From Phallusia mammillata (lineage: Eukaryota), in NCBI GenBank assembly GCA_965637545.1, contig OZ281494.1, positions 3,596,001 through 3,660,000 of the forward strand: a stretch of 64,000 nt of DNA, given 5' to 3'. A program made the position numbers and the translations under genes. The notes beneath the pieces were generated by a model, which saw only the letters and a program-made list of their open reading frames with translations, did no database searches and was not told the origin of the DNA. Below are positions 7,439 through 42,115 of this stretch, in pieces. The stretch's first letter is position 1. Each line of letters starts with the position of its first letter.

Positions 7439-8400
7439 ATGGTATTTACACTTTTCATAACTTTCCAGTGATTGTAAAATGCAAAAGTTGATATATGTAG
7501 CTATTGGGACGAAAATCTGGAAATCATTGGACGTTTTAAAGCAAGTGTAATAGCAGAGGCTCGAAAACACCTGCGCACTGTAAGTTGCGCCTATAGAGCC
7601 AACTTAATCACTAATTTTGTTGATTTAAAACAATTTGCATCAGATTAAACTGCGGCCCAACCAAAACAAAAGTTATATCTCTATAAGGTCCAGACGACGT
7701 ACGAAGGTGAAATTACGATACAAATGTTGGCAGTTTATAGCTAGACCCGATTCAAGCCCGTTTTGAAAAGGGTGGAATGACATAAATTTTTAGCTTAACC
7801 CTAAAGTGGGTGTTGAATTTCTGCTTGGTTAAGAAGCAAAATCAAAAAATATAACCTGCTTTAAAGCTGATTACAGCGAAAAAAATTACTTGTGATTTAA
7901 GCCCACTTAAATTAATTTCTTTTTCGTGCAACAGTCTAATTGTGTTTATTGTTTAGGAGTGTGGTAATTCCAACCAACATTGTTCACGATTTGAGAAGCA
8001 AGCTGCCAACAGGCAACTTTTAGAGGAATGCTATGGTGCTGGAATTATAGTGTTTACTTTTGAGTGTGTCTTTTGTGTGATCATGTATTTTGCTGTTGGT
8101 ATGCTTGCATGCATATTATCCGCGACATATTTTGTTGGTATTTGCGCTTTTACCTTGTTTTTAAATGCATATGACAAAAAACATGCGCGCCGTCGCTCCA
8201 GCGAGCGCATTCCAGAACGTGTGCTGCATGTTTTTACACTGATTGGTGGTGCTCCGGCCACAGCTTTTGCCATGAATGATTGCTGCATTCATCACAAATG
8301 TAGTAAAGGGCTCTATAAAAAAGTTTTTTTAAACCGTGCAGGTTGGTGCTGCTTTTGGTTGGTGATTTCTGCAGTTCTTTTGCTGAGTCTAATATATTAA
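7439..8400 (+). CDS. DUF1294/YsdA-like membrane protein, subfamily A (about 148 aa; exons 7439-7441 and 7957-8400)
   Basis: gaccgagaATG|gtattt is conserved upstream of all A-type copies. The acceptor gtttag|GAG opens a frame continuous with ORF 8050-8400 (LNAYDKKHARRRSSERIPERVLHVFTLIGGAPATAFAMNDCCIHHKCSK). Confidence 0.75.
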
Positions 8401-9760: not shown

Positions 9761-11235
9761 TTGTGCTCAATGTTAGAACTAAATGTTTCACCAAACTATT
9801 ACTATAGGCTCAAGTTTACGTTGATATGTACAAAAACACTAAGTATTGTTGTGGATGTTATACATCTAAAAACGACAACGCAAAGAGCAATTCAATAAGA
9901 CAGAGTTGTGGTGTTATCCAAAAGTTAATTTAATTCCCTTTATTCATGCTTACAAGCATTAATCGGAGAATCTGTAGATTGAATGGCGTTGAATGGCAGC
10001 GAATTCAACACCTTTGGGTGAAGGCTTGGGGCCTTTTAAACTTTTATTATACGTTTTGGTGTAGTCCACAGCATGAAAGCTTGGTAAAGCTTAATAGAGT
10101 ATGTAGTGCTAAACTTGCTGTCCAAACAGTGAATGATTTATATTGCTTTACAAGTAATTATAAACTGTTGATATGTTTTTTCTATCTTATTTTCTGAATC
10201 CTATGTTCACACTATATTTTCAATGCATTTTTAATGATAAAACCTTGCCCAAACCCTAATAGCTATAACTGTGAGCATTTTTTGGAGATATACGGTGTTA
10301 AAAAGGTATTTGTGTTCTATTTCCCACCTATCGAAATTTACCTAAAGGTGGGTCTGCCGTGGGGTTTGTGTTCGTTGATTTTCCAGTTATTACAGTGTTA
10401 GCAGCTCTAACAAACTGACGCAAATAGAACCAACCCAACTCCGTTTAAAAATCATTCAGGCGTTAAACGTAGGCTCGTAGGGGAAGTAAACTGGAGAAGA
10501 AAAACGTGATCAAAACAACAGTTTGCCTTATGACGAGACTGAAACTTTTTTCTTTCTTAAAATGATTTGAACATCAAAAACCGTACAATTAACGGTTGTG
10601 TTGATAGGCGGGTAATGCATCAAACGGGCTGTCAGATATCTTCATTAAGTTTGCAGTTCAATGTCGCTAAACTTGTGCGCAATGGAAGTGTTAAATGTTT
10701 CACCATACTATTGCTATAATTTCAAGTTTACCTTGATATGTGGAAACGCAGTAAAATGTTGTGATATTTGTTATACATCTGAAAACGACAATACAAAGAG
10801 CAAGTCAGTCAGACGGTTTTCCTTTCATTCATGCTTACATCCATTAATTGAAGAATCCGTAGATTGAATGGCGTTGAATAGCAATGGATCCATTTTTAGT
10901 TAGACAAACCTTTGGGGAAAGGGTTGGGCGTTTTGAAACGAGGATTACAGTTGGTTGGCGTACAACATGAACAGTTGGCAGCAGAAACAGTATAGCTTAA
11001 TAGAAAATGTCGTGCCAAACTTGCTGTAGAAACAGCAGTTCATTTATATTGCTTTACAAGTAAATGTAAGCTGTTAAGTTGTTTTCCTTTCTGACCGTTT
11101 TCTGTTTCGCTTGTTCGCACTTGTATATCGAAAAACGGAGGTCATAACATTTGGTAAAAGGTCAGCCCTTCTTGTTGCTGTTTTAGATCATTGTGTGTGT
11201 TTTTTAAATTAGATTAAACATCCACACCTAGAAGT
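9761..11235 (+). repeat. Segmental duplication of non-coding module 'M', paralogous to about 17751-19178
   Basis: Near-identical colinear sequence. Module M (aggcgttaaacgtaggctcg...; ctcaatgttagaactaaatgtttcacc...) also occurs at about 27000-27860, 31240-31920, 42850 and 54920-55110, upstream of subfamily-A genes. Confidence 0.85.
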
Positions 11236-11297
11236 TGCCATGGCATTTCGGCAAAACATATTCAACAGTTTGTAAATTGAATTATAGTCTCCTTTGT

Positions 11298-12568
11298 TTA
11301 TTTGTGACGTCGTATTTTATCGTAGGGTGAATCCGATTCGTTACTAGCCCCGTGTCTGTTATCATAGATATTAGTTGGATTGCTACCGCTTGCGAATTGA
11401 TCGTGGACTTCCCCATGTTGAGATAATTGCAAAGTGTCGTAACTGACTTCATCCAACTGATTGTGATCGTATTTTCGAACATGTGATTGTTGTCCATTGT
11501 CGTGAACCTTTGTTGATTGTTTCAACTTTCTGACCTGAGCATAGACATCGCTGCTTCCTGCTGCTGGCTTTGCAACTTCGCCAACCGCAATGCTTTTGTG
11601 ACGTGCTTCCTGGATTTCGTCATAATGACTGACTGCATGTTTTTGATGACGTGTCGAAGGTTGTGTTGAATGGTTGGCGAAACTGTTTTCTTCGTTATGA
11701 GGAATGTTGTACGTTTCTTCGGGTTCAAATTCGTCGCCTGTAACACAATTAATTCGATCCTGTTTAATTTTTTCAGCAAGCCGAATAGTTTTATTCTGAA
11801 ACTGACAATAATGGTTGTAAAATGGAAACAACAATTATGAAAGGTAATACAGTGTATGTAAGTTTACCATTGTTGAATTATTTTTCAAAAACAAACAAAT
11901 TATAGTTTAAACAAGTTATAGTTACTGTTATAAACAACTGTCGTATGTTTTCTACCCTCTACATCATATTCAATCACTGCAGCTGCGTTCACCGGTTTGT
12001 TTCTCCTGCGGAAGGAAACGCCGAATTTACTTTCTTAAAGAGTGAGAAAACATCAGTACAAGTGACTTATTGCAAACTTTCAGAGAAAGTTCCAAAATCA
12101 CAAAATGATTTTCCTACTTATAGTCTTACTTGGACAGGTTGTTGATCAAATTTGTCCTATGTGTTGAGTAAAGTAAAGTTATGTACAGAAACCTACTGCA
12201 GTTACCTTCTTTTCTTGTGTGACGTAACAAAGAAAACGAAAATGCAGATTATGACTAATATGACGCATCCGCTTGCTGTTGAAGCAATGATGGCTGTGTT
12301 AGCATTCGTTATGGCTGCAAAAATCAGAGAAAAAAACGTTTTAAATTTATCAACAGCATACACTTGACAAAATTAAATGTGATGTTTCGTTTTTCCGGGT
12401 TTTTGTGTCTGAAAATTGTTTATTCAACAATTTGTTCCGGTAAGTTTCTAATCAGTCAATTTGGTAATTGTTTCTTACCTTGTGTAGTGGTGTCAGTTGG
12501 CGAAATTTTGGTTGTATTTCTTACTATGGATGGTGTTAATGTAGTGGAAATAGTTGATTTGGCAGATT
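11298..12568 (-). pseudogene. 5'-truncated duplicate of the C-type lectin/ITIM receptor (end of stalk, TM exon and cytoplasmic tail only)
   Basis: Colinear with about 22638-23972. Intact TM exon and tail (SHYDEI, DVYAQV, VSYDTL, NIYDN, SPYDKI). No signal-peptide or lectin exons; homology breaks at about 12568 into module M. Confidence 0.8.
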
Positions 12569-12915
12569 GGCAGATTATAGTAGGTTGGTGTACAGCATGA
12601 ACAGTTTGCTTTAGCTTAGAAGAGATTGCAGTGCTAAACTCGCTGTAGAAACAGCAATTGATTTTTATTGCATTGCAAGTGAATGTCATCTGTAAGGTTG
12701 TTTCCCTTTCCGACCATTTTCTGATGCACTTGTTCAATCTCATATATTAAACAACAAAGGTCATAAAATTTGGTGAAAAGTCCGACAGTAATGTGTTGTT
12801 TTTGTTTTAGTTAGATCATTAGGTTGTTTTAAAGTTAGATTAAACGTCCACAACGGCAGTTGTAATTTAAGCAAACTTTCTTCAACCGACAAGCAAAATC
12901 TTCAACTGACCGAGA

Positions 12916-13948
12916 ATGGTATTTACACTTTTCATAACTTTCCAGTGATTGTAAAATGCAAAAGTTGATATATGTAGCTATTGGGGCGAAAATCTGGAAA
13001 TCATTGGACGTTTTAAAGCAAGTGTAATAGCAGAGGCTCGAAAACACCTGCGCACTGTAAGTTGCGCCTATAGAGCCAACTTAATCACTAATTTTGTTGA
13101 TTTAAAACAATTTGCATCAGATTAAACTGCGGCCCAACCAAAACAAAAGTTATATCCCTATAAGGTCCAGACGACGTACGAAGGTGAAATTACGATACAA
13201 ATGTTGGCAGTTTATAGCTAGACCTGATGCAAGGCAGTTTTGAAAAGGGTGGAATGACATAAATTTTTAGCTTAACCCTAAAGTGGGTGTTGAATTTCTG
13301 CTTGGTTAAGAAGCAAAATCAAAAAATATAACCCGTTTTAAAGCTGATTACAGCGAAAAAAATTACTTGTGATTTAAGCCCACTTAAATTAATTTCTTTT
13401 TCGTGCAACAGTCTATTTGTGTTTATTGTTTAGGAGTGGGGTAATTCCAACCAACATTGTTCACGATTTGTGAAGCAAGCTGCCATCAGGCAACTTTTAG
13501 GCGAATGCTATGGTGCTGGAATTATAGTGTTTACTTTTGAGTGTGTCTTTTGTGTGATTATGTATTTTGCTGTTGGTATGCTTGCATGCATATTATCCGC
13601 GACATATTTTGTTGGTATTTGCGCTTTTACCTTGTTTTTAAATGCCTATGACAAAAAACATGCGCCCCGTCGCTCCCACGAGCGCATTCCAGAACGTGTG
13701 CTGCATTTTTTTACACTGATTGGTGGTGCTCCGGCCACAGCTCTTGCCATGAATGATTGCTGCATTCATCACAAATGTAGTAAAGGGCTCTATAAAAAAT
13801 TTTTTTAAACCGTGCAGGTTGGTGCTGCTTTTGGTTGGTGATTTCTGCAGTTCTTGTGCTGAGTCTAATATATGAAGCTAAATTGTCTAAACTTTCACAC
13901 TATTGCTACTCACAACTAGTGATGTTTTTACAAAAGTACATCAAATAA
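12916..13948 (+). pseudogene. DUF1294-like gene, subfamily A, with a 1-nt deletion near 13800 (possible pseudogene or sequencing error)
   Basis: ATG|gtattt at 12916 and acceptor at 13433/13434. It reads aaaaaattttttt where the twin reads aaaaaagttttttt, giving TAA at 13806-13808. The restored frame runs to TAA at 13946-13948. Confidence 0.7.
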
Positions 13949-14629
13949 ATGGAAAGTCAAGCTTATTATTTGCTTCAGTTTGTAAATAAGTTGTTTTTTG
14001 CATTATTTTTCTTTACATGTTGGTAACCGTATGTGAACCAAATTTTCTTTCGTTTTTGCAAAATTACTTATAGCTTTTAGATAATTCGTCACGTCTTTTT
14101 CTGGCTTATACATCTTTCACAGATCAGAAAGGTTCCCAATAAATACATACACTACACTATGCAATTAATAACTGTTCGATAACGTATCACGTTAATACCT
14201 ACAACGTCATTTCCTTTACGTTAAACAACTACGTAGTTCGGAGGTGGAATTGTTTAAAGCAAACAGGCAGACATTTTAAAATAAGTAGCTGAGTTTATCT
14301 GTTGTCGATGGCTTTCTGCCAAAAACTTAAATTTAAAGCTGGGTAATATAATTAGTAGATGAAAAATAACGGACCTCGGCCAATCAAAAAAAGTGATAAT
14401 GATGATTTGACGTTTGTTTGCTTATTTTTTAATTTACTGCAAATACACATTTGGCTGTGTGTTTACGACATTTTAAGGTTAAAGATATTCATGTGCAATG
14501 TTGAATGCTTTTAGCTTTTGTTGTGGTTTTTATTAACAGTTTACAACTTTAGTTTGCAATCTGGTATTGTTCACTGATTCTTGTTTGTTTTCCAAAATGC
14601 TGTTGACCTGAATTGAAACAAATAAAAAA

Positions 14630-15349
14630 ATGGTATGTAGAATTTATTCTGTAGTTTTTAAAGATACGAGATTACCAAATGTGTAGCGGGAAAGTCGAAT
14701 AATTTAACATTAACTGAGCGGTTACAAATGCATCTCATAGTATCTAAAAGCTGTGCTTGAAAAAAAAAAAACGTTTATAACACACTGACCTACGAAGAGT
14801 TTCTGTTTCAACCACAGAATAACGAAATTTGTGTTTAACCTTTAGGATCAAGGCAATTCAAACTCACATCACTTATTTTATGAACCACAAACTGCAACAA
14901 CAAGTTACTTTGATACTTGCCAAGGCGCGGGAATTTTCATATTTGTTCTGGAAATTGTATTTTGTGTATTTATGCTTTGTGCTGTTGGTGCAAATGCTTA
15001 TGGCATATTCTTGATATATTTTGTTCTCATTTGGATTCTGACTCTTGCTGTAAATGCTTTTGACAAGGGCCTAGCATGCGATGGCTCTCCCCAGCGAATA
15101 CCAGAAGATATGCTGCATTTTTTCACACTGATTGGTGGTGCTCCGGCCACAGCTTTCGCAATGAATGATCCTATTCGACACAAATGCAGTAAAGTTTCCT
15201 ATCAAAAGAAGTTTTTGAGTCATGCAAGCTGTTGCTGCATTTGGCTGATGATTTTTGCCGGTATTGCACTTCTTAACGCAAAATGGTTTGCGGTGTCCCT
15301 TGTCCTATCAATGTACCATTCCATTCACTACTACAAAAATAACGAGTAG
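14630..15349 (+). CDS. DUF1294/YsdA-like membrane protein, subfamily B (about 168 aa; exons 14630-14632 and 14846-15349)
   Basis: aaaaATG|gtatgt; acceptor cctttag|GAT; open frame with AVNAFDKGLACDGSPQRIPEDMLHFFTLIGGAPATAFAMNDPIRHKCSK; AATAAA about 30 nt after the stop. Confidence 0.85.
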
Positions 15350-15656
15350 TTACCACGAGTAGAGTATTGTCTGATTAATAAAAGTCACATTTTTTGCAAG
15401 TTGTCACTAAATGTTTTTCATTTTTGCATCCCGTCCATCTGCATGCAAACATATTGCAAAGTTTATGAAGTATTGTTTCTATAAATCATGTTTTTTTTTA
15501 ATGCCAGATTTTGTTGTTACCAGTTTATAGGTTTGCGGTTCATTTGATATGTGATGTATTGTTGGTGGGCAAATATCTTTCATTTTGAATGGTTATAGAA
15601 AAAGTTTCAAAAGACCCCTTGTATTAGCCTATACATACAAGACCGAGACTGTAGAT

Positions 15657-16664
15657 CAGGGGTTCTTAAACTTTGGGGCGCGCCCCCCTAGGGGGCGTGA
15701 AGGGTTGGCAAGGGGGGCGCAGCACAATCTGGCTGCAAAGTTTTCACTTGCAAACAATTGTAAATGAATGAATTGGAAATATGTCGGCACTGATTTCGAA
15801 CTTATTGTTTAAAATAAACGCTTCATTACTCTGAAATGGATGTCCAGTTGTACTAACCAAACTTTTCTACATTGCGGGCCGGATACGTTTAATACTAATT
15901 CGCGCGGGCCGCATAGTTTACATGCCCTAGTGCCGTCTTCTCAAGCTTAACCCATGAGGCTATTTTTATGGGGGTGCCAAGTTTTTTTTGGTCTTTTCAA
16001 AAACCCATTTAAAATCTGTTAAATTGTATAGTTAGTCTCATCTTACAAGGAATATTTACATATTACGTCACAAGTAACACAATAAGGCAATTGTTTGCGC
16101 ACAATTAACACTTTTTGTTTTGTCTGTGACGTAATAAACTGACTTTGGATCAATCCTGGGCGTTGCAATCTTGTGAAAGTCGGTAATATTAATTTTACAT
16201 GTCGTAACAGTAAACTTTCGCAAGGAGTAGATCAATTTTTGACAGTATGAAGTTATCAATACGTTTTGGCAAACCTAAAAAATGGGATCGCGGGCCGTAG
16301 TTTGGTAACCCCTTTGCTATATAGTCGGCCGCACATTCTTTATTTTTTCGCAATTTCGCATTAGAGAATGCCTTGACTTTGAGTGAATCAACAATTTCTG
16401 GGCAACATATGCGTAGTTTACAAGAATACTGGCAACGGGGCTCTGTGCGCGCAAAAAAAACTGGTTTTCGCAACTTATCAGTGTTAAAGTGGCTTTTTCT
16501 AACGATTGGAACTAACTTGACAGTAGCTTAAGGCGGACCTACGATGTATGTTGTTTTCAAAAAAACAAGACAAGCATCATCAGTGCTAACGTTTTTTAGG
16601 GGGGGCGTGAGAATAAATAAATAGTGTCAAGTGGGGCATGGCCGAAAAAGTTTAAGAACCCCTG
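15657..16664. mobile_element. Non-autonomous hAT element (TIR CAGGGGTTCTTAAACTTT), degenerate TSD ctgtagat/ctgtaaaa
   Basis: Perfect terminal inverted repeats. The interior contains fragments of other MITE ends (gggccgtagtttggtaacccct). Confidence 0.75.
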
Positions 16665-19238
16665 CTGTAAAAGAAACAGGTGTGCAATTACTGGGAATGC
16701 CCCTTACTCGAAACAACAGTTTCGACTTGCGACTGATGAAGAACAGAACCATAACAACTACGCGGTTGATGTCTATGTAAAGTTTATAAACAGATCTCTT
16801 GAACCATTTGGTAGAGTTTAATGTTTTTGCACCATCGCTAAACTCGGGTGTGTTTTATTAATCATACACAATTAATAGGCTATTTTTATACGCGATTTCG
16901 ACCTACATTGATATTTCTGTGCCTGTATGCTGTTACGTAAAAACGAGTTGAATATACCATAGTACCAGAGTGAGTAAATACAAAGTGTATGTGGTCTGAA
17001 TACATTTATAAAATAAAAATTTAGCATACCAGAAAGTGTGTCATACTATTCATACTAAAACTTCCACAGGTTAGCATTCCTATTTTATGCATCACATTGT
17101 TGTACATATTATCAACATTATCAAAAATCTGCATCAAAACTTCGTCCGAATAGGAACAAATTTAGCATTGACAAATTATACAATACAATGCCCTTCCAGT
17201 TAAAACATGTTGATTTAATGTAATTCCTTACAGATTGCACATACAACTTTTAATTATTTTTACATTTGTAAATTGTAGTGGATTTCGTTATTGTGTTTTA
17301 ATACAAAAGAGCCTTGGAATGCTTGCTCCAATTGTTGTAAGAAAGTTTTATTATATTTACAGTTACAGCTGGTAACACTTAGCTCTGAGAGCTTTGTAAA
17401 AATCTTTGGTCATCAGTGCAATGCAAGAATTGTGTTAATAGGCAAAACAACGTCAAATAAAAACTTTGCGAATGTGGGGGTGGATTAAATTGGTTAAGAA
17501 TCACTGACCCAGACAGAATCTACCTAACTCGGTGGAATCATTCAGACGTGAAACGAAGGCTCGTAGGGGGCCTATGATCGAAAAGCAGTTTTGTCTTGTG
17601 ACGTAGCTGAAATTACTTTTTTCCTTCAAATGATTTGAGCGTCAGAAACTTTACAATGAACGATTGTGATGTTAGACTTTAGAGTCTAACAGATACATCA
17701 AACGTGCTGTCAGATATATTCATTAAATTTGCTATCTAACGTCGTTAAAGTTGTGCTCAATGTTAGAACTAACTGTTTCACCAAATTATTACTATAGGCT
17801 CAAGTTTACGTTGATATGCACAAAAACACTAAATTTTTTTTTTTCAATAAGACAGAGTTGTGGTGTTATCCAAAAGTTAATTTAATTCCCTTCATTCATG
17901 CTTACAAGCAATAATCGGAGAATCTGTAGATTGAATGGCGTTGAATGGCAGCGAATTCAACACCTTTGGGTGAAGGCTTGGGGCCTTTCAAACTTTTATT
18001 ATACGTTTTGGTGTAGTCCACAGCATGAAAGCTTGGTAAAGCTTAATAGAGTATGTAGTGCTAAACTTGCTGTCCAAACAGTGAATGATTTATATTGCTT
18101 TACAAGTAATTATAAACTGTTGATATGTTTTTTCTATCTTATTTTCTGAATCCTATGTTCACACTATATTTTCAATGCATTTTTAATGATAAAACCTTGC
18201 CCAAACCCTAAAAGCTATAACTGTGAGCATTTTTTGGAGATATACGGTGTTAAAAAGGTATTTGTGCTCTATTTCCCACCTATCGAAATTTACCTAAAGG
18301 TGGGTCTGCCGTGGGGTTTGTGTTCGTTGATTTTCCAGTTATTACAGTGTTAGCAGCTCTAACAAACTGACGCAAATAGAAGCGACCCAACTCCGTTTAA
18401 AAATCATTCAGGCGTTAAACGTAGGCTCGTAGGGGAAGTAAACTGGTAAAGAGAAACACGTGATCGAAACAACAGTTTGCCTTATGACGAGACTGAAACT
18501 ATTTTCTTTCTTAAAATGATTTGAACATCAAAAACCGTACAATTAACGATTATGTTGATAGGCGGGTAATGCATCAAACGGGCTGTCAGATATCTTCATT
18601 AAGTTTGCAGTTCAATGTCGCTAAACTTGTGCGCAATGGAAGTGTTAAATGTTTCACCATACTATTACTATAATTTCAAGTTTACCTTGATATGTGGAAA
18701 CGCAGTAAAATGTTGTGATATTTGTTATACATCTGAAAACGACAATACAAAGAGCTAGTCAGTCAGACGGTTTTCCTTTCATTCATGCTTACAGGCATTA
18801 ATTGAAGAATCCGTAGATTGAATGGCGTTGAATAGCAATGGATCCATTTTTAGTTAGACACACCTTTGGGGAAAGGGTTGGGCGTTTTGAAACGAGGATT
18901 ACAGTCGGTTGCCGTACAGCATGAACAGTTGGCAGCAGAAACAGTATAGCTCAATAGAGAATGTCGTGCCAAACTTGCTGTAGAAACAGCAGTTTATTTA
19001 TATTGCTTTACAAGTAAATGTAAGCTGTTAAGTTGTTTTCCTTTCTGACCATTTTCTGTTTCGCTTGTTCGCACTTGTATATTGAAAACGGAAGTCACAA
19101 CATTTGGTAAAAGGTCCGCCCTTAACTTGTTGCTGTTTCAGATCATTAATAAGATTAAACATCAACATCCAGAAGTTATAAATTGACCAGATTGCGTGGA
19201 CAAGTTTTCATCAACTGGCAAGCAACATCTGCGATTGA

Positions 19239-20403
19239 ATGGTATTTATACTTGTAACTTTTCAGTTGTTGTAAATTACAAAACGTTGTTATACTTAGCT
19301 ATTGAGGCAAATATCTGGAAAATACGGGGCGTTCTAAAACATAGAAAAAATTCTGCAACCTGCTGCCTTTCGGATAGAAATTAAGTACCCCTTAGAGAGA
19401 GGGTTTAAGCTATAGTTGTTATGCATTGCGAAAACGCCCACAGCTAAAATTCTAAAATCATTTTTCGGCAAAGTTTTAATATTACTATGATCACTGCAAT
19501 GATCTAAACCATGGTTTAAACGCCACAAAACAGTGATAAAAAAATCGGGGCTCACGATTTTATAAGCCTAATTGTATATGACTCTCGCGAAATAAAAGTT
19601 GCACACCCTGCTCTGAGGTGCAACTCAAACTTATTTTTTTAAGTTATACCTATAGTAGTTCCACAAGACTTACTAAGGTAAATTTACAATAGAAAGATGG
19701 CTAAGTGTAAAGTCAGACCCAATTCAAGCCCGTTTTGTCCAGACTTAAGCCCGAACTGGTATAACAAAACTTTAGGCTAGGTCTAAAGAGTGTGTAATGT
19801 TTCTTGTGGGTGGATAATTTAAGAAACAAAACCGAAATATACAGCTTGAGTTAAAGCGGTTTGAGCCATGTAGTTTGACGGTATCAACGTGTGGTGTAGC
19901 AAAACCCACCTAAAATCATTCACGTGCTTTTCAAAACTTTATAATTGTGTTTTTTTGTTTAGGAGTGGAACAGTCACAACCAATATCGTCCACATCATTA
20001 TGGAGTCAATCGTTTAGACGATTGCTATGTTGCTGGTGGTTTTGTGTTTATCCTTGAGTGTTTGGTTTGTTACCTGGCTGGTAAACCTGAAAGTGACATA
20101 TGTGCGATATACTTCTTTGGTATTTGCTGTTTTACTTTGCTTCTAAATATCTTGGATAAAACCCTTGCAATTGTTGACTGTTGTTTACGCATACCAGAAT
20201 GTGTGTTGCATTTTTTGACCATATTTGGTGGTGCTCCCGCCACAGCTTTTGCCATGAATGATTGCTGCCCTCGACACAAACGCAGTAAAGTGCCTTATCA
20301 AGAATGGTTTTTGATTTGTGCGACTGTCTGTATCTTTGGGCTTATGGTGTGTTGTGTTGGCCTATTTGTTGTAAAAAATATCAAACAACTGCCAAAATAT
20401 TAA
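19239..20403 (+). CDS. DUF1294/YsdA-like membrane protein, subfamily A-related (about 147 aa; exons 19239-19241 and 19963-20403)
   Basis: ATG|gtattt in module M; acceptor tgtttag|GAG; LNILDKTLAIVDCCLRIPECVLHFLTIFGGAPATAFAMNDCCPRHKRSK; AATAAA about 45 nt after the stop. Confidence 0.8.
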
Positions 20404-22061
20404 ATGTATAGTCACCAAGATATGATGATTTAAATTTCAAATGTTTCAATAAAGCCCACGTATTGTACATAAGCCACATTTAAACCATCATTTCGACTGA
20501 TATTACAATCTGTATTCAACTGTGTGCTGAAGTTTTCTTAAAATTTAATAATTTTAGGGTCGAAAAAATGAGAATATGGAAAGTTTTCTGAAAGAAAAAC
20601 ATCTACAAAAGTTTATAACAGCTGTCAAAGATCGACTGACAACGACTTAAGGCAGCTTCCAGAGTGATTTTTACGCCGTGCTGTAGCCTACAAACTTATT
20701 TAGATTTCAAGTCCAGAAACAAAACATATACGTTTATGGGTTTCTGTCCAGAAAATTAGGATTAGACAAACTTTAGGGCAAGGTGTTAATTTTTGTAGTC
20801 AAGATAGCCCAAATGGTAAGGTCTTGAAAACGTTTATTAGAGGTTTGCACCAACTGAAATGTATACTGTAATAAAGCAGAGCGAATCGTGCATACTGGCT
20901 GGGTTATTTGCTATCAAATTGTAACAAAGTACTTGTTTTAACTATGTTACAAATAGCTTTCGTTCATAAACTTAAGAACTATTTAGACTAGGGTGGTATG
21001 AATATTTGTCGTGCCAGGAATTGCAGAACCTTAATGAAATGTGGGATAACATGCAGGCTGTAGACTTAAGTCAAATAGTTAATTTGATTTATTGCTGCCA
21101 AATTTAGTTTAGATGGTTTGTAAACACGCTGGAGCACTTGTACCAAATTGCTTTAAAACAGTTTTAAAAATGTACGGCAAGATAAGTGTACAAAACAATA
21201 AAACTCGCAGTAAATAGTTTCTCAAAAGAAACACCAGCTTTTCAGGTATGTTTTTTGCAGTATTATTATCAAACAAAAAAGACAATAGGCAGTGTGTAAC
21301 AATAATTAAACTATATTATATTTTAGTTTGTGGAGGAAAAGTATGTCAGTTGTTTTCCAGTGTATTGCCAGCTCTATGTCAAAAAAAGGTTTACAAGCAT
21401 TTTTTAAGTCAACGTATGTATAAACAATGTCTTATACCCAGCAACTTGGAACGCGACTGCGGTTTGCAAATTGAGATGGTGAAGGTTATAATTTCACATA
21501 TATTTTAAAATTGCATCAAAACGAAAGCATTTTTTCTTGCACATAAAAAAACATTAGCAGTGGGCCTTATTACCTTCCGGGCCTATATACCTTCAGGTAC
21601 CTTACATCATATTTATAATTGCCAAAACTTTACATGACACAAGTGGTTTATTAAAATCGTTTTTACATGTTTATTACGCTATTTACAATATGTTTAAAAA
21701 TTGAGCAACATAACATCCGAATTTGTGAGTTCACCAAAAAAGATTTTTTACAGTCGGCCTTAACACATTATTACGCTATATTTAGATTAAAGTATACATT
21801 AAAATGATTAAAGTGAAATAAAATGCTGTCGTGAATTGTTGTATCACCGCCAGACCAGCGGATGTCGCTAGAGTCACACTAAATTCACTTGCTCAACCAA
21901 AAATCTATTTGAAGGGCAGGAACTTGGCCAAATGGTCTAGCGCGTCTGACCCACTTACAGACATATAAAACCTGATCGGGATTCGTCCCCAGAAGCATCC
22001 TGGGTTCGAACCCCGTAAAGAAAAAAATTTACTGCCCAGCAGTTTTTGGAATGGTCCAAGG

Positions 22062-22373
22062 CAGAGTTGCAAGCGGGCCTGAAATCTGAGCCCGAACCCG
22101 GCCCAAACCCGAAACGTTGTGAGAAGCGTGTTTGGGCCCGAAATTTTGATTGACAGGCCTACACAATGAACAATCGTTGACAATGGGGTAAACAATACGT
22201 TTTAGAGTAGGGTGGGCATTAGGTCAAAGCCAGAGAATTGTTACTAAAAATGGCAGAAACGGAACGTAAAGTCAGGTCCGTTTTGAGCCCGTTTTTTGAC
22301 AAACACCTAAGCCCGAAACCGAACCCGGCCCGAAAAGCCCGGCCCGAAAAGCCCGGCCCGAATTGCAACTCTG
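22062..22373. mobile_element. hAT-type MITE (TIR CAGAGTTGCAA), perfect 8-bp TSD gtccaagg
   Basis: TIRs cagagttgcaa / ttgcaactctg; TSD at 22054-22061 and 22374-22381; subterminal (g)cccggcccgaaaa tandem motifs. Confidence 0.9.
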
Positions 22374-22700
22374 GTCCAAGGCGCTTAATACGGAAACAGA
22401 CACGAAAACAGTGATTAGAATTCGTGCTTTTGAATGTTTTCGGTTCCCGTCAATCATAATTTGTATAAAAGGTTTAAGGAATAAAAAAACAATTGCGATA
22501 TATACTGATTCGAAACCTCCAGAAAATTTAAACGTATACACCATAGTATTGGGAATATCGGATGAAATCACAATACTTTGGGCAATTAGTGCAAACACTT
22601 TGCATTGTTTTCTACAATATAAGGGACTTACTTCAGATTGCCATGGCATTTCGGCAAAAAACAATCAACAGTTTGTAAATTGAATTATAGTTTCCTTTGT

Positions 22701-25314
22701 TTATTTGTGACGTCGTATTTTATTGTAGGTTGAATCCGATTCGTCACTAGCCCCGTGTCTGTTATCATAGATATTAGTTGGATTGCTGCCGCTTGCAAAT
22801 TGATCGTGGACTTTCACATGTTGAGATAGTTGCAAACTGTCGTAACTGACTCCATCCAATTGATTGTGATCGTATTTTCGAACATGTGATTGTTGTCCAT
22901 TGTCGTGAACCTTTGTTGATTGTTTTGTCTTTCTGACCTGAGCATAGACGTCACTGCATCCTGCTGCTGGCTCTGCAATTTCGTCAAACGCGATGATTTC
23001 GTGACGTGTTTTCTGGATTGCGTCATACTGACTGACGTCATCGTTTTGATGACGCGTTGAAGGTTGGGTTGAATGGGTAGCGAAACTGTTTTCTTCGTTA
23101 TGAGGAATGTTGTACGTTTCTTCGGGTTCAAATTCGTCGCCTGTAACACAATTAATTCGATCCTGTTGAATTTTTTTTTCATCAGCAAACCGAATAGTTT
23201 TATTCTGAAACTGACAATAATGGTTGTAAAATGGAAACAACAATTATGAAAGGTAATACAGTGTATGTAAGTTTACCATTGTTGGATTATTTTTCAAAAA
23301 CAAACAAATTATAGTTTAAACAAGTTATAGTTACTGTTACAAACAACTGTCGTATGTTTTCTACCCTCGACGTCATATTGAATCACTGCAGCTGCGTTCA
23401 CCGGTCTGTTTCTCCTGCGGAAGGAAACGCCGAATTTACTTTCTTAAAGAGTGAGAAAACATCAGTACAAGTAACTTATTGCAAGTCAGAAAGTTCCAAA
23501 ATCACAAAATGGTTTTCCTACTAAAAGTCTTACTTGGACAGGTTGTTGATCAAATTTGTCCTATGTGTTAAGTAAAGTAAAATTATGTACAGAAACCTTC
23601 TGTAGTTACCTTCTTTTCTTGTGTGACTTAACAAAGAAAACGAAAATGCAGATTATGACTAATATGAGGCATCCGCTTACTGTTGAAGCAATGATGGCTG
23701 TGTGAGCATTCGTTATGGCTGCAAAAATCAGAGAAAAAAACGTTTTGATGTTATCAACCGCATACACTTGACAAAATTAAATGTGATGTTTCGTTTTTCC
23801 GGGATTTTATGTCTGAAAATTGTAAAGGTTTATTCAACAAATTGTTCCGGTAAGTTTCTAAAATTTGGTAATTGTTTCTTATCTCCTGTAGTGGTGTCAG
23901 TTGGCGAAATTTTGGTTGTATTTCTTACTTTGAATGGTGTTAATATAGTGGAAATAGTTGGTTTGACAGATTGTTGCATGTTTGTTGTTGTCAGTTCGGT
24001 AAATGGTAGAATGGTGTTTGTGGTTGTTGTGGTGGATGGCAATATTTCTGAAATAGCTGGTTGTAGGCTTGTTGTTGGTGCTTTGGAGGATGGTAAGTTG
24101 TGTGTAGCTGTAACTGATGTGACAGATAAATGTAAGTTTTTTTAGTTTTTTTTTAATAGGCATTATCCAGGCATGTATGGTTTGTTTTCCTACCATTGTT
24201 CAGTGCAATTGTGTTGCTATATGTGTTGTTTCACCAAATGAACTCAATAAAAACACCATTTTACATACAATCGCCGTAATGGAGACATGTTTACCTGACA
24301 TGCTTTTTTCACAAATGTATCTCGCTCTGTGTCGTGTACATCGTACGTCATACCATTGGTAAGTGGTGTTTTGTACACACCGGTTTTTATGACCCATTGT
24401 AACGCAATGTTTCTTTCTGCTTTTGTTATTTGGTCGACCATTTTTCCACATGGTTGTTGTAGGGGAAACATCGCTTCCATCACTCCATCGAAACGCATTT
24501 GTGTTTCCGACCCGTTTTGCACCGATGTATAGCGAAAAGGGTTTATCTGAATAAACAAAAACAGTCGATTCTCAACACACACTCCAAATAATGCTGGATT
24601 ACCCAAAAGGTAAAGTAATCACGTGCATCAAGAGAAGTGGGGCACCACAAAACATCTACTGAACTGAATTTGCGGTCTCATTATTTCAGTAAGTGAGTAA
24701 GTAAGTTTATTTTGCACAGAATATTACATGCACTACCATGTTGAATATTTAGAGTTAAAACTGAGCGTTTCATACCAATATAATTATAGAAACAACACAA
24801 AAATAATTTAGGTTTTCAAGCTTTCTTGCGGACCCCAGACATAAAATGCCATAAGCTTAAGTGCTTGGACCTCAAAGAGTTTCAGCTGGACCTAAATACG
24901 AGCAACTGGGTGTTATTTGTCAGCGGTAACCGTAAAAGGCAAAAAAGGAAACAATATTTTGTGCATGGATTGCTAAACACACAAAAATAATTTGGAATTT
25001 TTATGCCACATAGAAACTAAAAACTAATTATGGTTGCCAATTTCTATTTTTCACTTTCACGCTTGTCAAGCCTTTAAATAGCTGAGATTATTCTTACCGG
25101 TCAGGTTTATAGATGACCTTAAAAAGATGAAAATGTCTAAAGTTTTAACATTAGCTACATTGGCTTGCAATGCAGAACATTTCTCTTTTGCTTCAGCATA
25201 CGAATTGACTGAATTCATTTCGATAGAATATTGTAATCCATTGAAGTTATGCCAACTTCGTCCGTTAGCAGAAACAGATAAACACAACGTAAACAACAAA
25301 ACTATAACCGCCAT
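22701..25314 (-). CDS. Type I membrane C-type lectin receptor with mucin-like stalk and ITIM-like tail (model about 447 aa; exons 25314-25098, 24546-24295, 24113-23883, 23812-23768, 23718-23610, 23414-23365, 23140-22701)
   Basis: Signal peptide MAVIVLLFTLCLSVSA. CTLD motifs EAKEKC, LYIGAKR, FRWSDGS, WKNGRPNN, HCV, WYDVRC, YICEK. T/S/P-rich stalk. TM AIIASTVSGCLILVIICIFVFFV followed by KSHKKRR. Tail Tyr motifs. Splice phases are mutually consistent, except that the exon-3 donor reads AT instead of GT. Confidence 0.8.
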
Positions 25315-25459
25315 ATTTGTTCAAACAATCATAGCCCGTCCAAGTTTTCTAAGAGGTAAATAAAGCATTACCAAGCATTGTCCAGTCTTGCAAACTACGC
25401 TGTTACTCGTGGTCTGCGATTAACCTGACTTTCTGTCCATGAAATGAAACTAAACTAAA

Positions 25460-31918: not shown

Positions 31919-32823
31919 ATGGTATTTGTACTAACTTTTCAGTTGTTGTAAATTACAAAAATTAATATATTTAGCTATTGGAGCAAAAAAGTGGGAAATA
32001 CCGAGCTTTCCAAAGCAAATAGGCAGAGGCTCGGATACACCTGGTCATGGTGGTTGCAAACCATTTTTTATTAAGTAAAAATTGAGTCCATTAAGTAATA
32101 ATATCACCGGACGTACAAACACGAAACCAGCCCGATCTAAAAAAGTAATACCTGTGTCAGGTCTACATGACTTACCAAGGTGAAATTACGATACAAATGT
32201 CTCACAGACTAACGTTGGACCCGATTAAAGTCCGTTTTGAAAGGACGGCATGACACAAAACCTGATTACAGCGAATTAATAAAGTGATTAAAATTTTAAA
32301 AAAAATGATCCTGATCAAAAAAGGGCTTGTGATTTTACAAAGCCCGTTAAAAGATAATTTGTGCCACAGTCTAATTGTGTTCATTGTTTAGGAGTGGGAT
32401 AATTCCAACCAACATCGTTCACAATTTAAGATGCAAGCTGCCAACAAGAAGCGTTTAGACAAACACTATATTGCTGGAGTTATAGTGTTTATTTTTGAGT
32501 GTGTCTTATGTGTGATTATGTATTATGCTGTTGACAAACACGCATGCATTGTATGCGTGGCATATTTTGTTGTCATTTGCATCGTAACTTTGTTGTTAAA
32601 TTTATTTGACAAATGCCTTGCTTGCAGTGGCTCCAGCGAGCGCATTCCAGAGGTTGTGCTGCACTTTTTGACACTGATTGGTGGTGCTCCGGCCACAGCT
32701 TTAGTCATTAATGATCCCATTCGACACGAATGCAGTAAAGTTTCCTATCGAGAGGCGTTTGTTTGTCTGTGCATTTGTTTGTTGCATTTTGCTGATACGT
32801 GCTGTTTACACACTATTTTGTAG
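31919..32823 (+). CDS. DUF1294/YsdA-like protein, subfamily A (about 144 aa; exons 31919-31921 and 32392-32823), C-terminal helix frameshifted
   Basis: ATG|gtattt; acceptor tgttta g|GAG; LNLFDKCLACSGSSERIPEVVLHFLTLIGGAPATALVINDPIRHECSK. A +1 nt change near 32765 relative to the 5018 paralog alters the last helix, and RHK has become RHE. Confidence 0.65.
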
Positions 32824-37221: not shown

Positions 37222-37903
37222 ATGGTAAGTAGAATTTATTCTGTAATTTTGGTGTCGAAAATCTAAATAGTTCGGAGCAATTACAAGTGGATTTCATAGC
37301 ATGTAAACATTGTAAAGGCTGTGCTTGAACAAAAAAATGTTTAAAACACACTCACCTACGAAGTGTTTTTGTTTCAACCACAGGATAACGAAATTTGTCT
37401 TTTACCTTTAGGATCAAGGCAATGGAAATTCAAATCACTTGATTTACGAACCACAAACGGCAACAACAATTTACTTAAAAGCTTGTCAAGGGGCAGGATT
37501 TATCATTTTTGTCATGGAAATTGCAATTTGTGTATTTATGCTTTGTGGTGTTGATGAAAATGCGTTTGGCTTATTCTTATATTTTGTTCTCATTTGGACC
37601 CTGACTCTTGCTTTAAACGCTTTTGATCTAGCATGCAATGACTCCCCCATGCGTATACCAGAAAATGTGCTGCATTTTTTCACGCTGATTGGTGGTGCTC
37701 CGGCTACAGCTTTAGCCATGAGCGATCCTATTCGACACAAACGCAGTAAAGTTTCCTATCAAAAAAAGTTTCTGGAACATGCAGGCATTGGGTGCTTTTG
37801 TCTGTTGACTTCTACCGCCCTACACTTTCTTATTACAAACTGGTTTAAGTTGTTAATTGTCTTATCAATGTGCCTTTTCAAACGCTACTACACAAATAAC
37901 TAG
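37222..37903 (+). CDS. DUF1294/YsdA-like membrane protein, subfamily B (about 164 aa; exons 37222-37224 and 37412-37903)
   Basis: aaaATG|gtaagt; acceptor cctttag|GAT; LNAFDLACNDSPMRIPENVLHFFTLIGGAPATALAMSDPIRHKRSK; AATAAA about 60 nt after the stop. Confidence 0.85.
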
Positions 37904-41653: not shown

Positions 41654-42115
41654 ATGCGTCCACAAGCTACCAACGCAAGCTATGCAAACGCTTGCAATAG
41701 AGCTGCATGCAAAGTATTTTTTGCTGAGTTTCTCTTTTTATTGTTTAAGTGTTGTGCAGTTGGTTTTGCTGAAGGTGCCGAATTCCTTGTTTTTTTCGTT
41801 CGTCTTTGGTTCTTTACTTTGATTTTAAATATCTTGGATCAAATTCTCGCATGTACTGGCTTTTGCCGTCGTATACCCGAAGGTGTGTTGCACTTTTTCA
41901 CAGTGGTAGGTGGTGCCCCGGCCACAGCGATAGCTATGAATGATTTCTTCACCAGACATAACCGCAATAGTGTGGCTTATCAGAAAGTTTTTATTGACCG
42001 TGCAAACAAATGTTGCTCGTATCTGGTGTTTAAGGCAGTTATTTTATATTTCTTCAAAAAACACATTGAAAACTGTTTCCTAAAAGCCATTGAATTGATT
42101 TTCAATAACCACTAA
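41654..42115 (+). CDS. DUF1294/YsdA-like membrane protein (153 aa from the internal ATG; acceptor at 41632/41633, first exon not found)
   Basis: LNILDQILACTGFCRRIPEGVLHFFTVVGGAPATAIAMNDFFTRHNRNS. The frame is open from ttttag|GAT. No ATG|GT was found in the upstream module, which ends in a MITE terminus. Confidence 0.7.
   Translation: MRPQATNASYANACNRAACKVFFAEFLFLLFKCCAVGFAEGAEFLVFFVRLWFFTLILNILDQILACTGFCRRIPEGVLHFFTVVGGAPATAIAMNDFFTRHNRNSVAYQKVFIDRANKCCSYLVFKAVILYFFKKHIENCFLKAIELIFNNH

What the first reader, a model, noticed from the sequence alone, without database searches (positions are those of the whole stretch)
22701..25314. Type I C-type lectin receptor with multiple ITIM-like motifs inside the DUF1294 array
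Seen: signal peptide, CTLD, mucin stalk, TM and a tail of about 165 aa with ETYNIP, SQYDAI, DVYAQV, VSYDSL, NIYDN and STYNKI. Each Tyr and its +3 residue is conserved in the duplicate (SHYDEI, VSYDTL, SPYDKI). The CTLD has RPN and WYD in place of the canonical EPN/QPD and WND. Known: (I/V/L/S)xYxx(L/V/I) is the ITIM consensus, YxN binds Grb2, and EPN/QPD plus WND mark Ca2+-dependent sugar binding. Inference: an inhibitory-type receptor that probably binds a non-carbohydrate or atypical ligand.
Basis: partly seen in the sequence, partly recalled or inferred. Interest (0 to 1): 0.75.

Follow-up and report, generated by a model that had tools for sequence, protein, structure and literature searches.

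The report
Sea-squirt lectin receptor copy, splice-damaged
This is one outlying copy of a large, unstudied sea-squirt (Phallusia mammillata) family of cell-surface lectin-type receptors whose inner tail carries conserved tyrosine docking motifs, but this copy has lost a splice site and its sugar-binding residues, so it may be a shortened receptor or a decaying gene.

Summary
On the minus strand, 25314-22701, there is a signal peptide, a C-type lectin domain (CTLD) in two exons, a Thr/Ser/Pro stalk exon, a TM exon and a Tyr-rich tail.

The gene model needed correction:
- A conserved 50-nt micro-exon, which adds an eighth Tyr, was missed.
- The stalk exon's donor is G|AT here. Every paralog checked has G|GT.

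An in-frame membrane receptor therefore needs stalk-exon skipping, which gives 355 aa. Other routes stop at codon 218 or 249.

The "duplicate" at 11.2-12.6 kb lacks the CTLD.

The tail belongs to a family with at least 46 genomic matches, about 40 of them in a 2.2-Mb cluster on another contig. Among 1.84 billion protein representatives it matches one protein, an unstudied 355-aa Phallusia mammillata entry. That entry, and an RNA-run contig junction, confirm CTLD-TM-tail splicing in a paralog, not in this copy.

Two ITIM-consensus motifs are family-wide. So are YxxP, YxN and DVYAQV motifs. A phosphotyrosine docking receptor is likely; a net inhibitory sign is unproven.

The scan had already noted the main cluster on other DNA (s1-405477).

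Interest is moderate.

The parts
25098..25314 (-). Exon 1: start codon, signal peptide and N-terminal half of the CTLD. Donor G|GTAAGA, phase 1.
   Evidence: It is 60-79% identical to exon 1 of paralogs. P0001 residues 8-73 map onto the equivalent exon of L016.
24295..24546 (-). Exon 2: C-terminal half of the CTLD, with RPN, RKKHC, an extra Cys (NRC), WYD and YICEK. Phase 1 in and out.
   Evidence: PF00059 at 40.1 bits, E = 6.6e-10. Paralog alignment.
23883..24107 (-). Exon 3: 225-nt Thr/Ser/Pro-rich, mucin-like stalk. Phase 1 in and out.
   Evidence: Stalk exons at the same position in paralogs L009, L012, L018 and L023-L025.
23881..23882 (-). Mutated splice donor of exon 3. It reads G|AT here and in the 99% twin on the same contig. 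The partial copy B, its twin B' and five copies on contig C4 read CAAG|GT.
   Evidence: There is no other phase-1 GT in the exon or in the read-through.
23610..23718 (-). Exon 4: short juxtamembrane piece, TM helix and KSHKKRR stop-transfer. The acceptor needs phase 1; the donor is AAG|GTAACT, phase 2.
   Evidence: Equivalent to P0001 residues 155-193.
23365..23414 (-). Exon 5: 50-nt micro-exon (RNRPVNAAAVIQYDVE) with a conserved Tyr. Phase 2 in, phase 1 out.
   Evidence: Conserved with cag|G...G|gta sites in 13 paralogs. Equivalent to P0001 residues 192-213.
22701..23140 (-). Exon 6: 145-aa tail with seven Tyr (TYNIP, SQYDAI, DVYAQV, KYDH, VSYDSL, IYDN, STYNKI) and the TAA stop at 22701-22703.
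   Evidence: Lowest dN/dS in this frame. The profile hits P0001 residues 211-355.
11235..12569 (-). Copy B: a partial duplicate, 92.6% identical in nucleotides with introns included. It holds the 3' part of the stalk exon (intact GT donor), the TM exon, the micro-exon and the tail, but no CTLD or signal-peptide exon.

Best explanation
The locus is a diverged copy of a Phallusia-specific multigene family of type I, single-CTLD membrane receptors. It sits away from the main cluster, inside a DUF1294 gene array.

How the family most likely works:
- The CTLD binds an extracellular ligand. The family motif is QPN plus W[YWF]D, so the site is not a classical EPN/QPD-WND sugar site.
- The roughly 170-aa tail, probably disordered (inferred from its polar, low-complexity composition, not predicted with a tool), is phosphorylated on up to eight conserved tyrosines and docks SH2 proteins.
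- An SHP-type phosphatase would dock at the two family-wide ITIM-consensus motifs, VSYD[ST]L and SxY[DN]x[LI].
- Adaptor-type SH2 proteins would dock at YDN, YNIP and DVYAQV.
- The receptor therefore modulates cell signalling, probably dampening it.

This copy:
- The stalk exon has lost its GT donor.
- A membrane receptor can arise only by skipping that exon. The skip is in frame and gives 355 aa, the same stalk-less layout as the database paralog.
- Other splice routes give a truncated secreted product.
- Together with loss of the family's Ca/sugar-site residues and an extra unpaired Cys, this makes it either a stalk-less variant with a new ligand or a gene in early decay.

Shown: gene structure, family membership, motif conservation, the donor lesion, and the presence of SHP-type and Syk-type genes.
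Inferred: phosphorylation, SH2 recruitment, the sign of signalling, and expression of this copy.
For: Exon structure and splice phases.

CTLD: exon 2 scores 40.1 bits against PF00059.

Family:
- At least 46 six-frame tail matches in the genome: 4 on contig C1 and about 40 on C4 between 26.8 and 29.0 Mb.
- Paralogs keep the same exon order.
- The micro-exon is conserved.

Tail:
- 6 Tyr are invariant in 17 tails; enrichment p = 9e-5.
- The ITIM count exceeds shuffles, P = 0.0016.
- A profile of the 17 tails hit exactly one of 1.84e9 representatives, P0001.

P0001:
- It is a 355-aa Phallusia mammillata entry.
- It maps exon by exon, at 91-98% identity, onto paralog L016.
- The loose end of a run-X8 contig joins CTLD exon 2 to the TM exon of L016.

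Donor: GT in every other copy checked, AT in A and its twin A'.

Signalling partners in this genome:
- An SH2-SH2-PTP gene at C5:12.13 Mb.
- Two Syk-like kinases.
- Ascidian genomes hold most ITIM/ITAM signalling proteins, and [A/D]VYxxV is a recurrent tunicate receptor-tail motif (PMC12582321).
Against: - No RNA evidence for this copy. The only contigs laid (92-96% alike) trace to paralog L016.
- The canonical route from the CTLD and stalk to the TM exon is broken.
- Changes in A's tail since the split from B are 12 nonsynonymous to 6 synonymous. Copy B, which has no CTLD, shows 10 to 4. The two ratios do not differ from each other and are not clearly below neutral.
- All 10 exonic substitutions between A and A' appear to be nonsynonymous. 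This is inferred plus the exon identities; only the two tail changes were checked codon by codon.
- The ITIM consensus is loose and is a subset of the YxxPhi sorting signal.
- The tail mixes motif types, so the sign of signalling is open.
- The 39-residue gap between the two family ITIMs is wider than the 20-30 residues I recall for pairs that engage SHP tandem SH2 domains.
Confidence: 0.55

Rival explanations
1. This copy, like its twin A' and the CTLD-less fragments B and B', is a non-functional relic. It would be a dispersed duplicate from the C4 cluster, caught early in pseudogenisation, whose reading frames are still open only because it is young.
For: - The splice donor is GT>AT, shared by A and A'.
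- It has unique substitutions at CTLD positions that are otherwise family-conserved: Q>R in QPN, NDN>KKH, WND>WSD, plus an extra Cys.
- Tail changes on the A lineage (12 nonsynonymous to 6 synonymous) match those of the truncated copy B.
- Exonic differences between A and A' appear to be all nonsynonymous.
- No RNA contig fell on its CTLD exons.
Against: - All six exons are open and nine of ten splice sites are canonical.
- Skipping exon 3 is exactly in frame and reproduces the 355-aa stalk-less layout of the expressed paralog.
- Every Tyr motif is retained.
- The RNA data were four small contig sets, so absence proves nothing.
Confidence: 0.35
2. The family are endocytic or phagocytic uptake receptors. 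In this view the YxxPhi motifs (YDAI, YAQV, YDSL, YNKI) are AP-2 sorting signals, not phosphotyrosine docking sites. Vertebrate type I CTLD receptors such as DEC-205, the mannose receptor and CD302 work this way.
For: - There are four YxxPhi motifs in the tail.
- The best solved-structure matches of the paralog's CTLD include DEC-205 and mannose-receptor CTLDs.
- The topology is type I.
Against: - Conservation extends to non-YxxPhi tyrosines (YNIP, YDN, IEYN) and to the -2 positions (V and S) that matter for the ITIM consensus but not for AP-2 binding.
- Eight conserved Tyr is more than sorting needs.
- The two roles are not exclusive.
Confidence: 0.2
3. This copy mainly makes a secreted lectin or decoy. 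Use of the strong upstream GT at 23928 gives a stop at codon 218. Retention of intron 3 gives a stop at codon 249. Either product is a soluble CTLD with part or all of the stalk.
For: AAA|GTAAGA at 23928 is a good donor by consensus, and both routes end in early stops.
Against: - The GT at 23928 is also present in copy B and is evidently not the family's donor.
- A premature stop upstream of three junctions would normally trigger nonsense-mediated decay.
- There are no RNA data.
Confidence: 0.12
4. The tail is an activating or dual-purpose scaffold, not an inhibitory module. It would work like the transmembrane adaptors that ascidians lack (LAT-type), using the YxN, YxxP and core-2 motifs.
For: - IYDN, TYNIP and DVYAQV are invariant or nearly so.
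- In Botryllus a dual [A/D]VYxxV tail partners the activating receptor, and LAT and SLP-76 are absent from ascidians (PMC12582321).
- Two Syk-like kinases are present.
Against: No ITAM, hemITAM or ITSM pattern occurs in the tail. The two best consensus matches are ITIMs.
Confidence: 0.25

Closest known systems
Phallusia mammillata 'C-type lectin domain family 4 member G-like' (CAB3231619.1 / UniRef100_A0A6F9DA46), 355 aa, uncharacterised
   Same: Same family. It has a signal peptide, a short-form CTLD, a TM helix, the micro-exon peptide and the same 145-aa tail. The tail profile hits it at E = 2.4e-78. It maps to paralog L016 on contig C4.
   Different: - It is a different locus.
- It has QPN and WWD, not RPN and WYD.
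- It has no stalk exon at all.
- It has intact splice sites.
- It has transcript-level support: a spliced contig from an RNA-type run. The finding's copy has none.
Vertebrate ITIM-bearing CTLD receptors (DCIR/CLEC4A, CLEC12A, Ly49, NKG2A, KLRG1) and the tunicate CD94/NKR-P1-like receptors (BsCD94-1, CiCD94-1)
   Same: - A single CTLD ectodomain, often without sugar-binding residues.
- Tyrosine-motif signalling.
- Clustered multigene families.
- DCIR and CLEC4D are among the closest solved CTLDs.
   Different: - Those are type II proteins with a short N-terminal tail carrying one ITIM (my knowledge; PMC5465252 for the type II tunicate CD94).
- This family is type I, with a 169-aa C-terminal tail and eight Tyr.
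- There is no tail homology.
Simple type I single-CTLD receptors (layilin, chondrolectin, CD302)
   Same: The layout is signal peptide, one CTLD, a TM helix and a cytoplasmic tail.
   Different: The tails are unrelated. None of these appeared in the tail profile search. They are not known as expanded clusters or as ITIM receptors (my knowledge).
Botryllus schlosseri fester co-receptors (FcoR)
   Same: - A fast-evolving clustered tunicate receptor family.
- Tails combine canonical ITIMs, YxxI/L/V 'core-1' and [A/D]VYxxV 'core-2' motifs.
- DVYAQV in this family fits core-2 exactly (PMC12582321).
   Different: FcoR ectodomains are immunoglobulin-superfamily, not CTLD. No sequence homology was detected. 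No link to allorecognition is shown here.

Membership tests
C-type lectin-like domain (Pfam PF00059) | A profile match above the curated cut-off. | tested here: met
   Exon 2 alone scores 40.1 bits against a 22.6-bit cut-off. The paralog P0001 carries PF00059 and aligns over the whole domain to CLEC4D and DCIR.
C-type lectin-like domain (Pfam PF00059) | Four core cysteines (C1-C4 and C2-C3) and a WIGL-type core motif. | tested here: met
   The cysteines lie in EKC (exon 1), HCVTMG, DVRC and YICEK. LYIGA stands in place of WIGL. One extra Cys (NRC) is unique to this copy.
Ca2+-dependent carbohydrate-binding C-type lectins | An EPN or QPD triplet, an acidic/amide pair before Cys2, and WND. | tested here: not met
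   This copy has RPN, RKKHC and WYD. The family has QPN, GNDNC and W[YWF]D, with WND in one paralog only.
ITIM-bearing inhibitory receptors | A cytoplasmic (S/I/V/L)xYxx(I/V/L) motif. | tested here: met
   SQYDAI, VSYDSL and STYNKI in this copy. VSYD[ST]L and SxY[DN]x[LI] are kept in most or all of 17 paralogs.
ITIM-bearing inhibitory receptors | Tyrosine phosphorylation and recruitment of SHP-1/2 or SHIP, with an inhibitory outcome. | not testable with these tools
   Only plausibility could be checked. An SH2-SH2-PTP gene lies at C5:12129497-12133100.
ITAM / hemITAM / ITSM receptors | Yxx[LI]x6-12Yxx[LI], [DE]3xYxxL, or TxYxx[VI]. | tested here: not met
   None of these patterns occurs in the 169-aa tail (tail sequence and motif scans, inspected by eye).
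NK-complex-type CTLD receptors (CD94/NKG2, Ly49, tunicate CD94-like) | Type II topology: an N-terminal cytoplasmic tail, a signal-anchor and a C-terminal CTLD. | tested here: not met
   The leader is N-terminal and cleavable in appearance. The CTLD precedes the TM helix, and a basic stretch follows it.
Phallusia CTLD-TM-Tyr-tail family (P0001 type) | The same exon order, including the micro-exon, and a tail homologous over its full length. | tested here: met
Phallusia CTLD-TM-Tyr-tail family (P0001 type) | Intact splice sites that allow the CTLD to be joined to the TM exon and tail. | tested here: inconclusive
   The stalk-exon donor is AT. An in-frame skip from exon 2 to exon 4 is possible but has not been observed.

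The most novel reading that the evidence does not exclude
The family (about 40 loci in 2.2 Mb, plus this dispersed outpost) is a convergent, NK-complex-like system of rapidly diversifying lectin-type receptors in a solitary ascidian. In this reading the CTLD exons diverge while one shared ITIM-bearing signalling tail is kept uniform. The system would serve self/non-self or microbial discrimination by blood cells. Copy A, stalk-less and without a sugar site, would be a neofunctionalised member with a protein ligand.
Probability: 0.12. Interest if true: 0.75.

Novelty: new variant of a known kind. Interest (0 to 1): 0.4.

Why it matters
Tunicates are the closest living relatives of vertebrates. 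How paired or inhibitory immune-receptor families arose is an open question.

This family offers a concrete, testable case:
- It is a large clustered family of type I CTLD receptors.
- All members share one conserved multi-tyrosine tail that has no detectable homolog elsewhere.
- Synonymous divergence is 0.19 in the tail exon against 0.54 in the CTLD exon of the same paralogs. This points to homogenisation of the signalling module while the ligand-binding module diversifies.

The copy in this window is a natural experiment. A single splice-donor change converts a stalked receptor into either a stalk-less receptor or a secreted or dead product. It is also useful for annotation, because ab initio models will mis-join it.

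The general idea of ascidian membrane proteins with CTLD ectodomains and ITIM tails dates from the first Ciona genome survey. PMC2248247 cites that survey. This finding is therefore an extension, not a surprise.

Tried and rejected
1. RNA support for this copy. One run search and one lay of four RNA-type contig sets gave no contig on the CTLD or stalk exons and no joints. The four short pieces on the TM and tail exons differ from both A and B. Their loose ends match paralog L016. This is no proof of silence.

2. The alternative open frame over the tail exon (124 aa, 22814-23188). I rejected it for three reasons. It needs the tttcag acceptor at 23205, which the family does not use.

3. A U12-type AT-AC intron as a rescue of the AT donor. 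I rejected it because the donor reads ATAAGA, not ATATCC, and the intron ends in AG.

4. Other in-frame donors. There is no phase-1 GT in exon 3 or in its read-through.

5. Homologs of the tail outside Phallusia.
- Profile search: one hit.
- Word searches with the tail and CTLD regions of P0001: only P0001 itself.
- ESM Atlas: best score 0.83, an unnamed molluscan cluster, below the useful range.

6. ETYNIP as a Grb2 YxN site. I rejected it because the Asn is at +1.

7. Tests for purifying selection on this copy were inconclusive.

8. Mapping the segmental duplication by DNA search was swamped by a 1-kb interspersed repeat.

9. Steps not done.
- No database search, fold or complex prediction was run with the joined (spliced) protein. 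The joined CDS was used only inside a local script, for lengths and motif counts.
- Complex prediction was not used, because unphosphorylated motif docking would not have moved the odds.
Full report
WHAT IS THERE

The window is AT-rich eukaryotic DNA with no N stretches. Reading the minus strand of 22600-25450 in three frames gives six exons.

| Exon | Coordinates | Content | Phase |
|---|---|---|---|
| 1 | 25314-25098 | Start codon, hydrophobic leader ending VSA\|NG, first half of a CTLD | out 1 |
| 2 | 24546-24295 | Second half of the CTLD | in 1, out 1 |
| 3 | 24107-23883 | Stalk, 38 Ser/Thr/Pro of 74 residues | in 1, out 1 |
| 4 | 23718-23610 | TM helix followed by KSHKKRR | in 1, out 2 |
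| 5 | 23414-23365 | 50-nt micro-exon, RNRPVNAAAVIQYDVE | in 2, out 1 |
| 6 | 23140-22701 | 145-aa tail and TAA stop | in 1 |

- Exon 2 alone scores 40.1 bits against Pfam Lectin_C, cut-off 22.6.
The TM exon leaves phase 2, which only the micro-exon can accept.
- The second open frame over the tail exon (124 aa) is therefore not used. It also has the higher dN/dS.

THE FAMILY AND THE ORGANISM

- The tail exon has at least 46 six-frame matches in the window's own 240-Mb assembly. Four are on the window's contig C1 and about 40 lie on C4 between 26.8 and 29.0 Mb. About 20 are full-length and open.
- Around those tails, paralogs show the same exon order: CTLD exon 1, CTLD exon 2, an optional stalk exon, TM exon, micro-exon, tail.
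- The micro-exon is conserved in 13 copies with canonical cag|G and G|gta sites and a conserved Tyr.
- A profile of 17 tails (alignment A2) was run against 1.84 billion cluster representatives. It found exactly one protein, P0001, at E = 2.4e-78.
- P0001 is CAB3231619.1 / A0A6F9DA46, 'C-type lectin domain family 4 member G-like [Phallusia mammillata]', 355 aa.
- P0001 maps exon by exon at 91-98% identity onto paralog L016 at C4:28.20 Mb. The genome is therefore Phallusia mammillata or a very close relative.
- P0001's sequence confirms three things in that paralog: the CTLD is joined to the TM exon and tail, the micro-exon exists, and the tail begins G-DE[FI]EPEETYNIP.
- Word-based searches with P0001's tail and CTLD regions returned only P0001 itself. 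The family is essentially absent from protein databases, and its tail has no detectable relative outside this species.
- The scan had already noted the C4 cluster on other DNA (s1-405477). My independent look at the C4 paralogs agrees with that note.

THE LESION IN THIS COPY

- The TM-exon acceptor needs phase 1.
- The partial copy B, its twin B' and five C4 copies end the stalk exon with CAAG|GT (GTAAGA, GTTAGA, GTGAGA or GTTGCA).
- The finding's copy (A) and its 99% twin A' (C1:3747758, 129 kb away) read GGAG|AT.
- There is no other phase-1 GT in the exon or in the read-through. The AT donor is not U12-like.

| Splice route | Product |
|---|---|
| Skipping exon 3 (in frame) | 355 aa, the same length and stalk-less layout as P0001 |
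| Use of the AT donor | 430 aa |
| Strong upstream GT at 23928 | Stop at codon 218 |
| Intron 3 retention | Stop at codon 249 |

This copy's CTLD also carries unique changes at positions that the paralogs conserve:
- QPN has become RPN.
- GNDNC has become RKKHC.
- WND(G) has become WSD(G).
- There is an extra Cys (NRC).

Selection evidence is inconclusive:
- Polarised with C4 outgroups, A's tail has 12 nonsynonymous and 6 synonymous changes since its split from B. Copy B, which has no CTLD, has 10 and 4.
- The exonic differences between A and A' appear to be all nonsynonymous (only the two tail changes were checked codon by codon).
- None of this separates a young pseudogene from a diverging receptor.

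THE 'DUPLICATE'

- Copy B (11235-12569) is 92.6% identical to A over 1.3 kb, introns included.
- It starts in the middle of the stalk exon.
- No CTLD or signal-peptide exon lies upstream before the next DUF1294 gene.
- Its twin B' also lacks them.
- B is a 5'-truncated fragment. Conservation of motifs between A and B is therefore weak evidence.
- The 17-paralog alignment is the real evidence.

THE TAIL

The cytoplasmic part is 169 aa with eight Tyr. In the 17-tail alignment the invariant tyrosines are those of TYNIP, HYDAI, DVYAQV, VSYDTL, NIYDN and SxYDEL.

| Test | Observed | Comparison | P |
|---|---|---|---|
| Tail-exon Tyr invariant | 6 of 7 | 19 of 139 other columns | 9e-5 |
| ITIM-consensus matches in this copy | 3 (SQYDAI, VSYDSL, STYNKI) | 0.23 mean in shuffles | 0.0016 for 3 or more |

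- Family-wide, only VSYD[ST]L and SxY[DN]x[LI] keep the ITIM consensus. The HYDAI site usually has Asn at -2.
- TYNIP is YxxP, a Crk-type SH2 preference by my knowledge. It is not YxN.
- IYDN is the only YxN.
- DVYAQV fits the [A/D]VYxxV 'core-2' motif described on Botryllus FcoR tails (PMC12582321).
- No ITAM, hemITAM or ITSM pattern is present.

Divergence among the same paralogs:

| Exon | dS | dN/dS |
|---|---|---|
| Tail (exon 6) | 0.19 | 0.51 |
| CTLD (exon 2) | 0.54 | 0.36 |

The tail exon looks homogenised among paralogs while the CTLD drifts apart.

SIGNALLING PARTNERS

- SH2 and PTP scans of the genome and a local tblastn show an SH2-SH2-PTP gene at C5:12129497-12133100, an SHP/corkscrew-type layout.
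- Two intronless ORFs at C2:25.608 and 25.619 Mb are tandem-SH2 tyrosine kinases of Syk type.
- The Botryllus paper reports that ascidians hold most ITIM/ITAM pathway proteins but lack LAT and SLP-76.

RNA EVIDENCE

- No listed holder of the stretch is on record as RNA.
- Four RNA-type contig sets gave four short pieces, on the TM and tail exons only. They are 92-96% alike and match neither A nor B exactly.
- Their loose ends are KTVADSPKP and IIVDEVARP, which are P0001/L016 sequence.
- One loose end is split in L016 exactly between the end of CTLD exon 2 and the TM exon.
- Paralog L016 therefore has a spliced contig in an RNA-type run, consistent with its expression. This copy has no support either way.

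READING

Family level: a type I, single-CTLD receptor with a phosphotyrosine docking tail is well supported by structure and conservation. SHP recruitment at the two ITIMs is the most likely single mechanism. The tail is mixed, however, and the sign of signalling is untested.

Locus level: this is a dispersed outlier, inside a DUF1294 array confirmed. It can only make a membrane receptor by exon skipping.

My probabilities:
- About 0.55 that it still encodes a functional family-type receptor or variant that works by tyrosine docking.
- About 0.35 that it is a relic.
- These two readings are alternatives and cover most of the probability. The other three rivals (endocytic receptor, secreted product, activating scaffold) overlap with them and with each other, so their confidences do not add to these figures.

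COMPARISON WITH KNOWN SYSTEMS

- It works like vertebrate ITIM-bearing CTLD receptors. It is not a member of those families: the topology is type I, not type II, and the tails are unrelated.
- Its layout resembles layilin, chondrolectin and CD302, but with an unrelated tail.
- Its motif vocabulary matches Botryllus FcoRs, but the ectodomain differs.
- The general notion of ascidian CTLD membrane proteins with ITIM tails goes back to the Ciona genome survey, cited in PMC2248247.
- I therefore class it as a new variant of a known kind, of moderate interest.

LIMITS

No search, fold or complex prediction was run with the joined protein. Exons were searched separately by reference. The joined CDS was used only in a local script.

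Noticed in passing
window 644-46559 (for example 8050-8400, 13470-13808, 14972-15349, 20044-20403, 32431-32823, 37439-37903, 41654-42115, 46131-46559): There is an array of at least 12 single-exon ORFs of 110-155 aa, on both strands, with the motif VLHFFTLIGGAPATAFAMN. Five were tested and all match DUF1294 (PF06961), four of them above the cut-off. DUF1294 is, to my knowledge, mainly a bacterial membrane-protein family, so a tandem expansion in an ascidian is odd. It might reflect an old horizontal acquisition.
   Followed up: partly
G000:C1:18,000-1,830,000, also C7:3.3-3.5 Mb and 10.5-10.8 Mb, C4:22.8 Mb: The protein tyrosine phosphatase domain (PF00102) is massively expanded. There are 544 first-look candidates, and dozens of near-identical N-terminal PTP exons are spread along the first 1.8 Mb of the window's contig.
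   Followed up: no
G000:C2:25608466-25610352 and 25619049-25620893 (L029, L030): Two intronless ORFs of 628 and 614 aa lie 11 kb apart. Both encode Syk/ZAP-70-type kinases with tandem SH2 domains and a tyrosine kinase domain. They may be retrogene-derived duplicates.
   Followed up: partly
window about 15649-16679: A roughly 1-kb interspersed repeat has more than 35 copies at 83-94% identity on all large contigs. It swamped the DNA search meant to map the segmental duplication.
   Followed up: no
G000:C1:3729000-3752500 (L021, L022) versus window 11235-25314: The block holding B and A is repeated about 125-129 kb downstream as B' and A'. A and A' are about 99% identical and share the AT donor. 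The spacing differs: 16.8 kb between B' and A', 11.4 kb between B and A. At residues 13-14 of the tail, A' reads QI, the C4 consensus, while A and B read HN. This hints at gene conversion.
   Followed up: partly
L027 (G000:C4:28428000-28437999) and L026, L028: The C4 cluster holds more CTLD exon pairs than tails. For example, the second gene in L027 has CTLD exons and a stalk-like Thr/Ser-rich ORF but no recognisable TM exon or tail before the next gene. The family may therefore include secreted or differently anchored members.
   Followed up: partly
Own genome, CTLD exons: There are 573 first-look PF00059 candidates. All 149 listed matches, from the 150 candidates scored, are above the cut-off. 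They form large clusters on C3 (24.9-28.9 Mb), C4 (23.4-29.0 Mb), C7 (10.5-10.8 Mb), C8 and C5. This is a very large CTLD repertoire for a 240-Mb genome.
   Followed up: no
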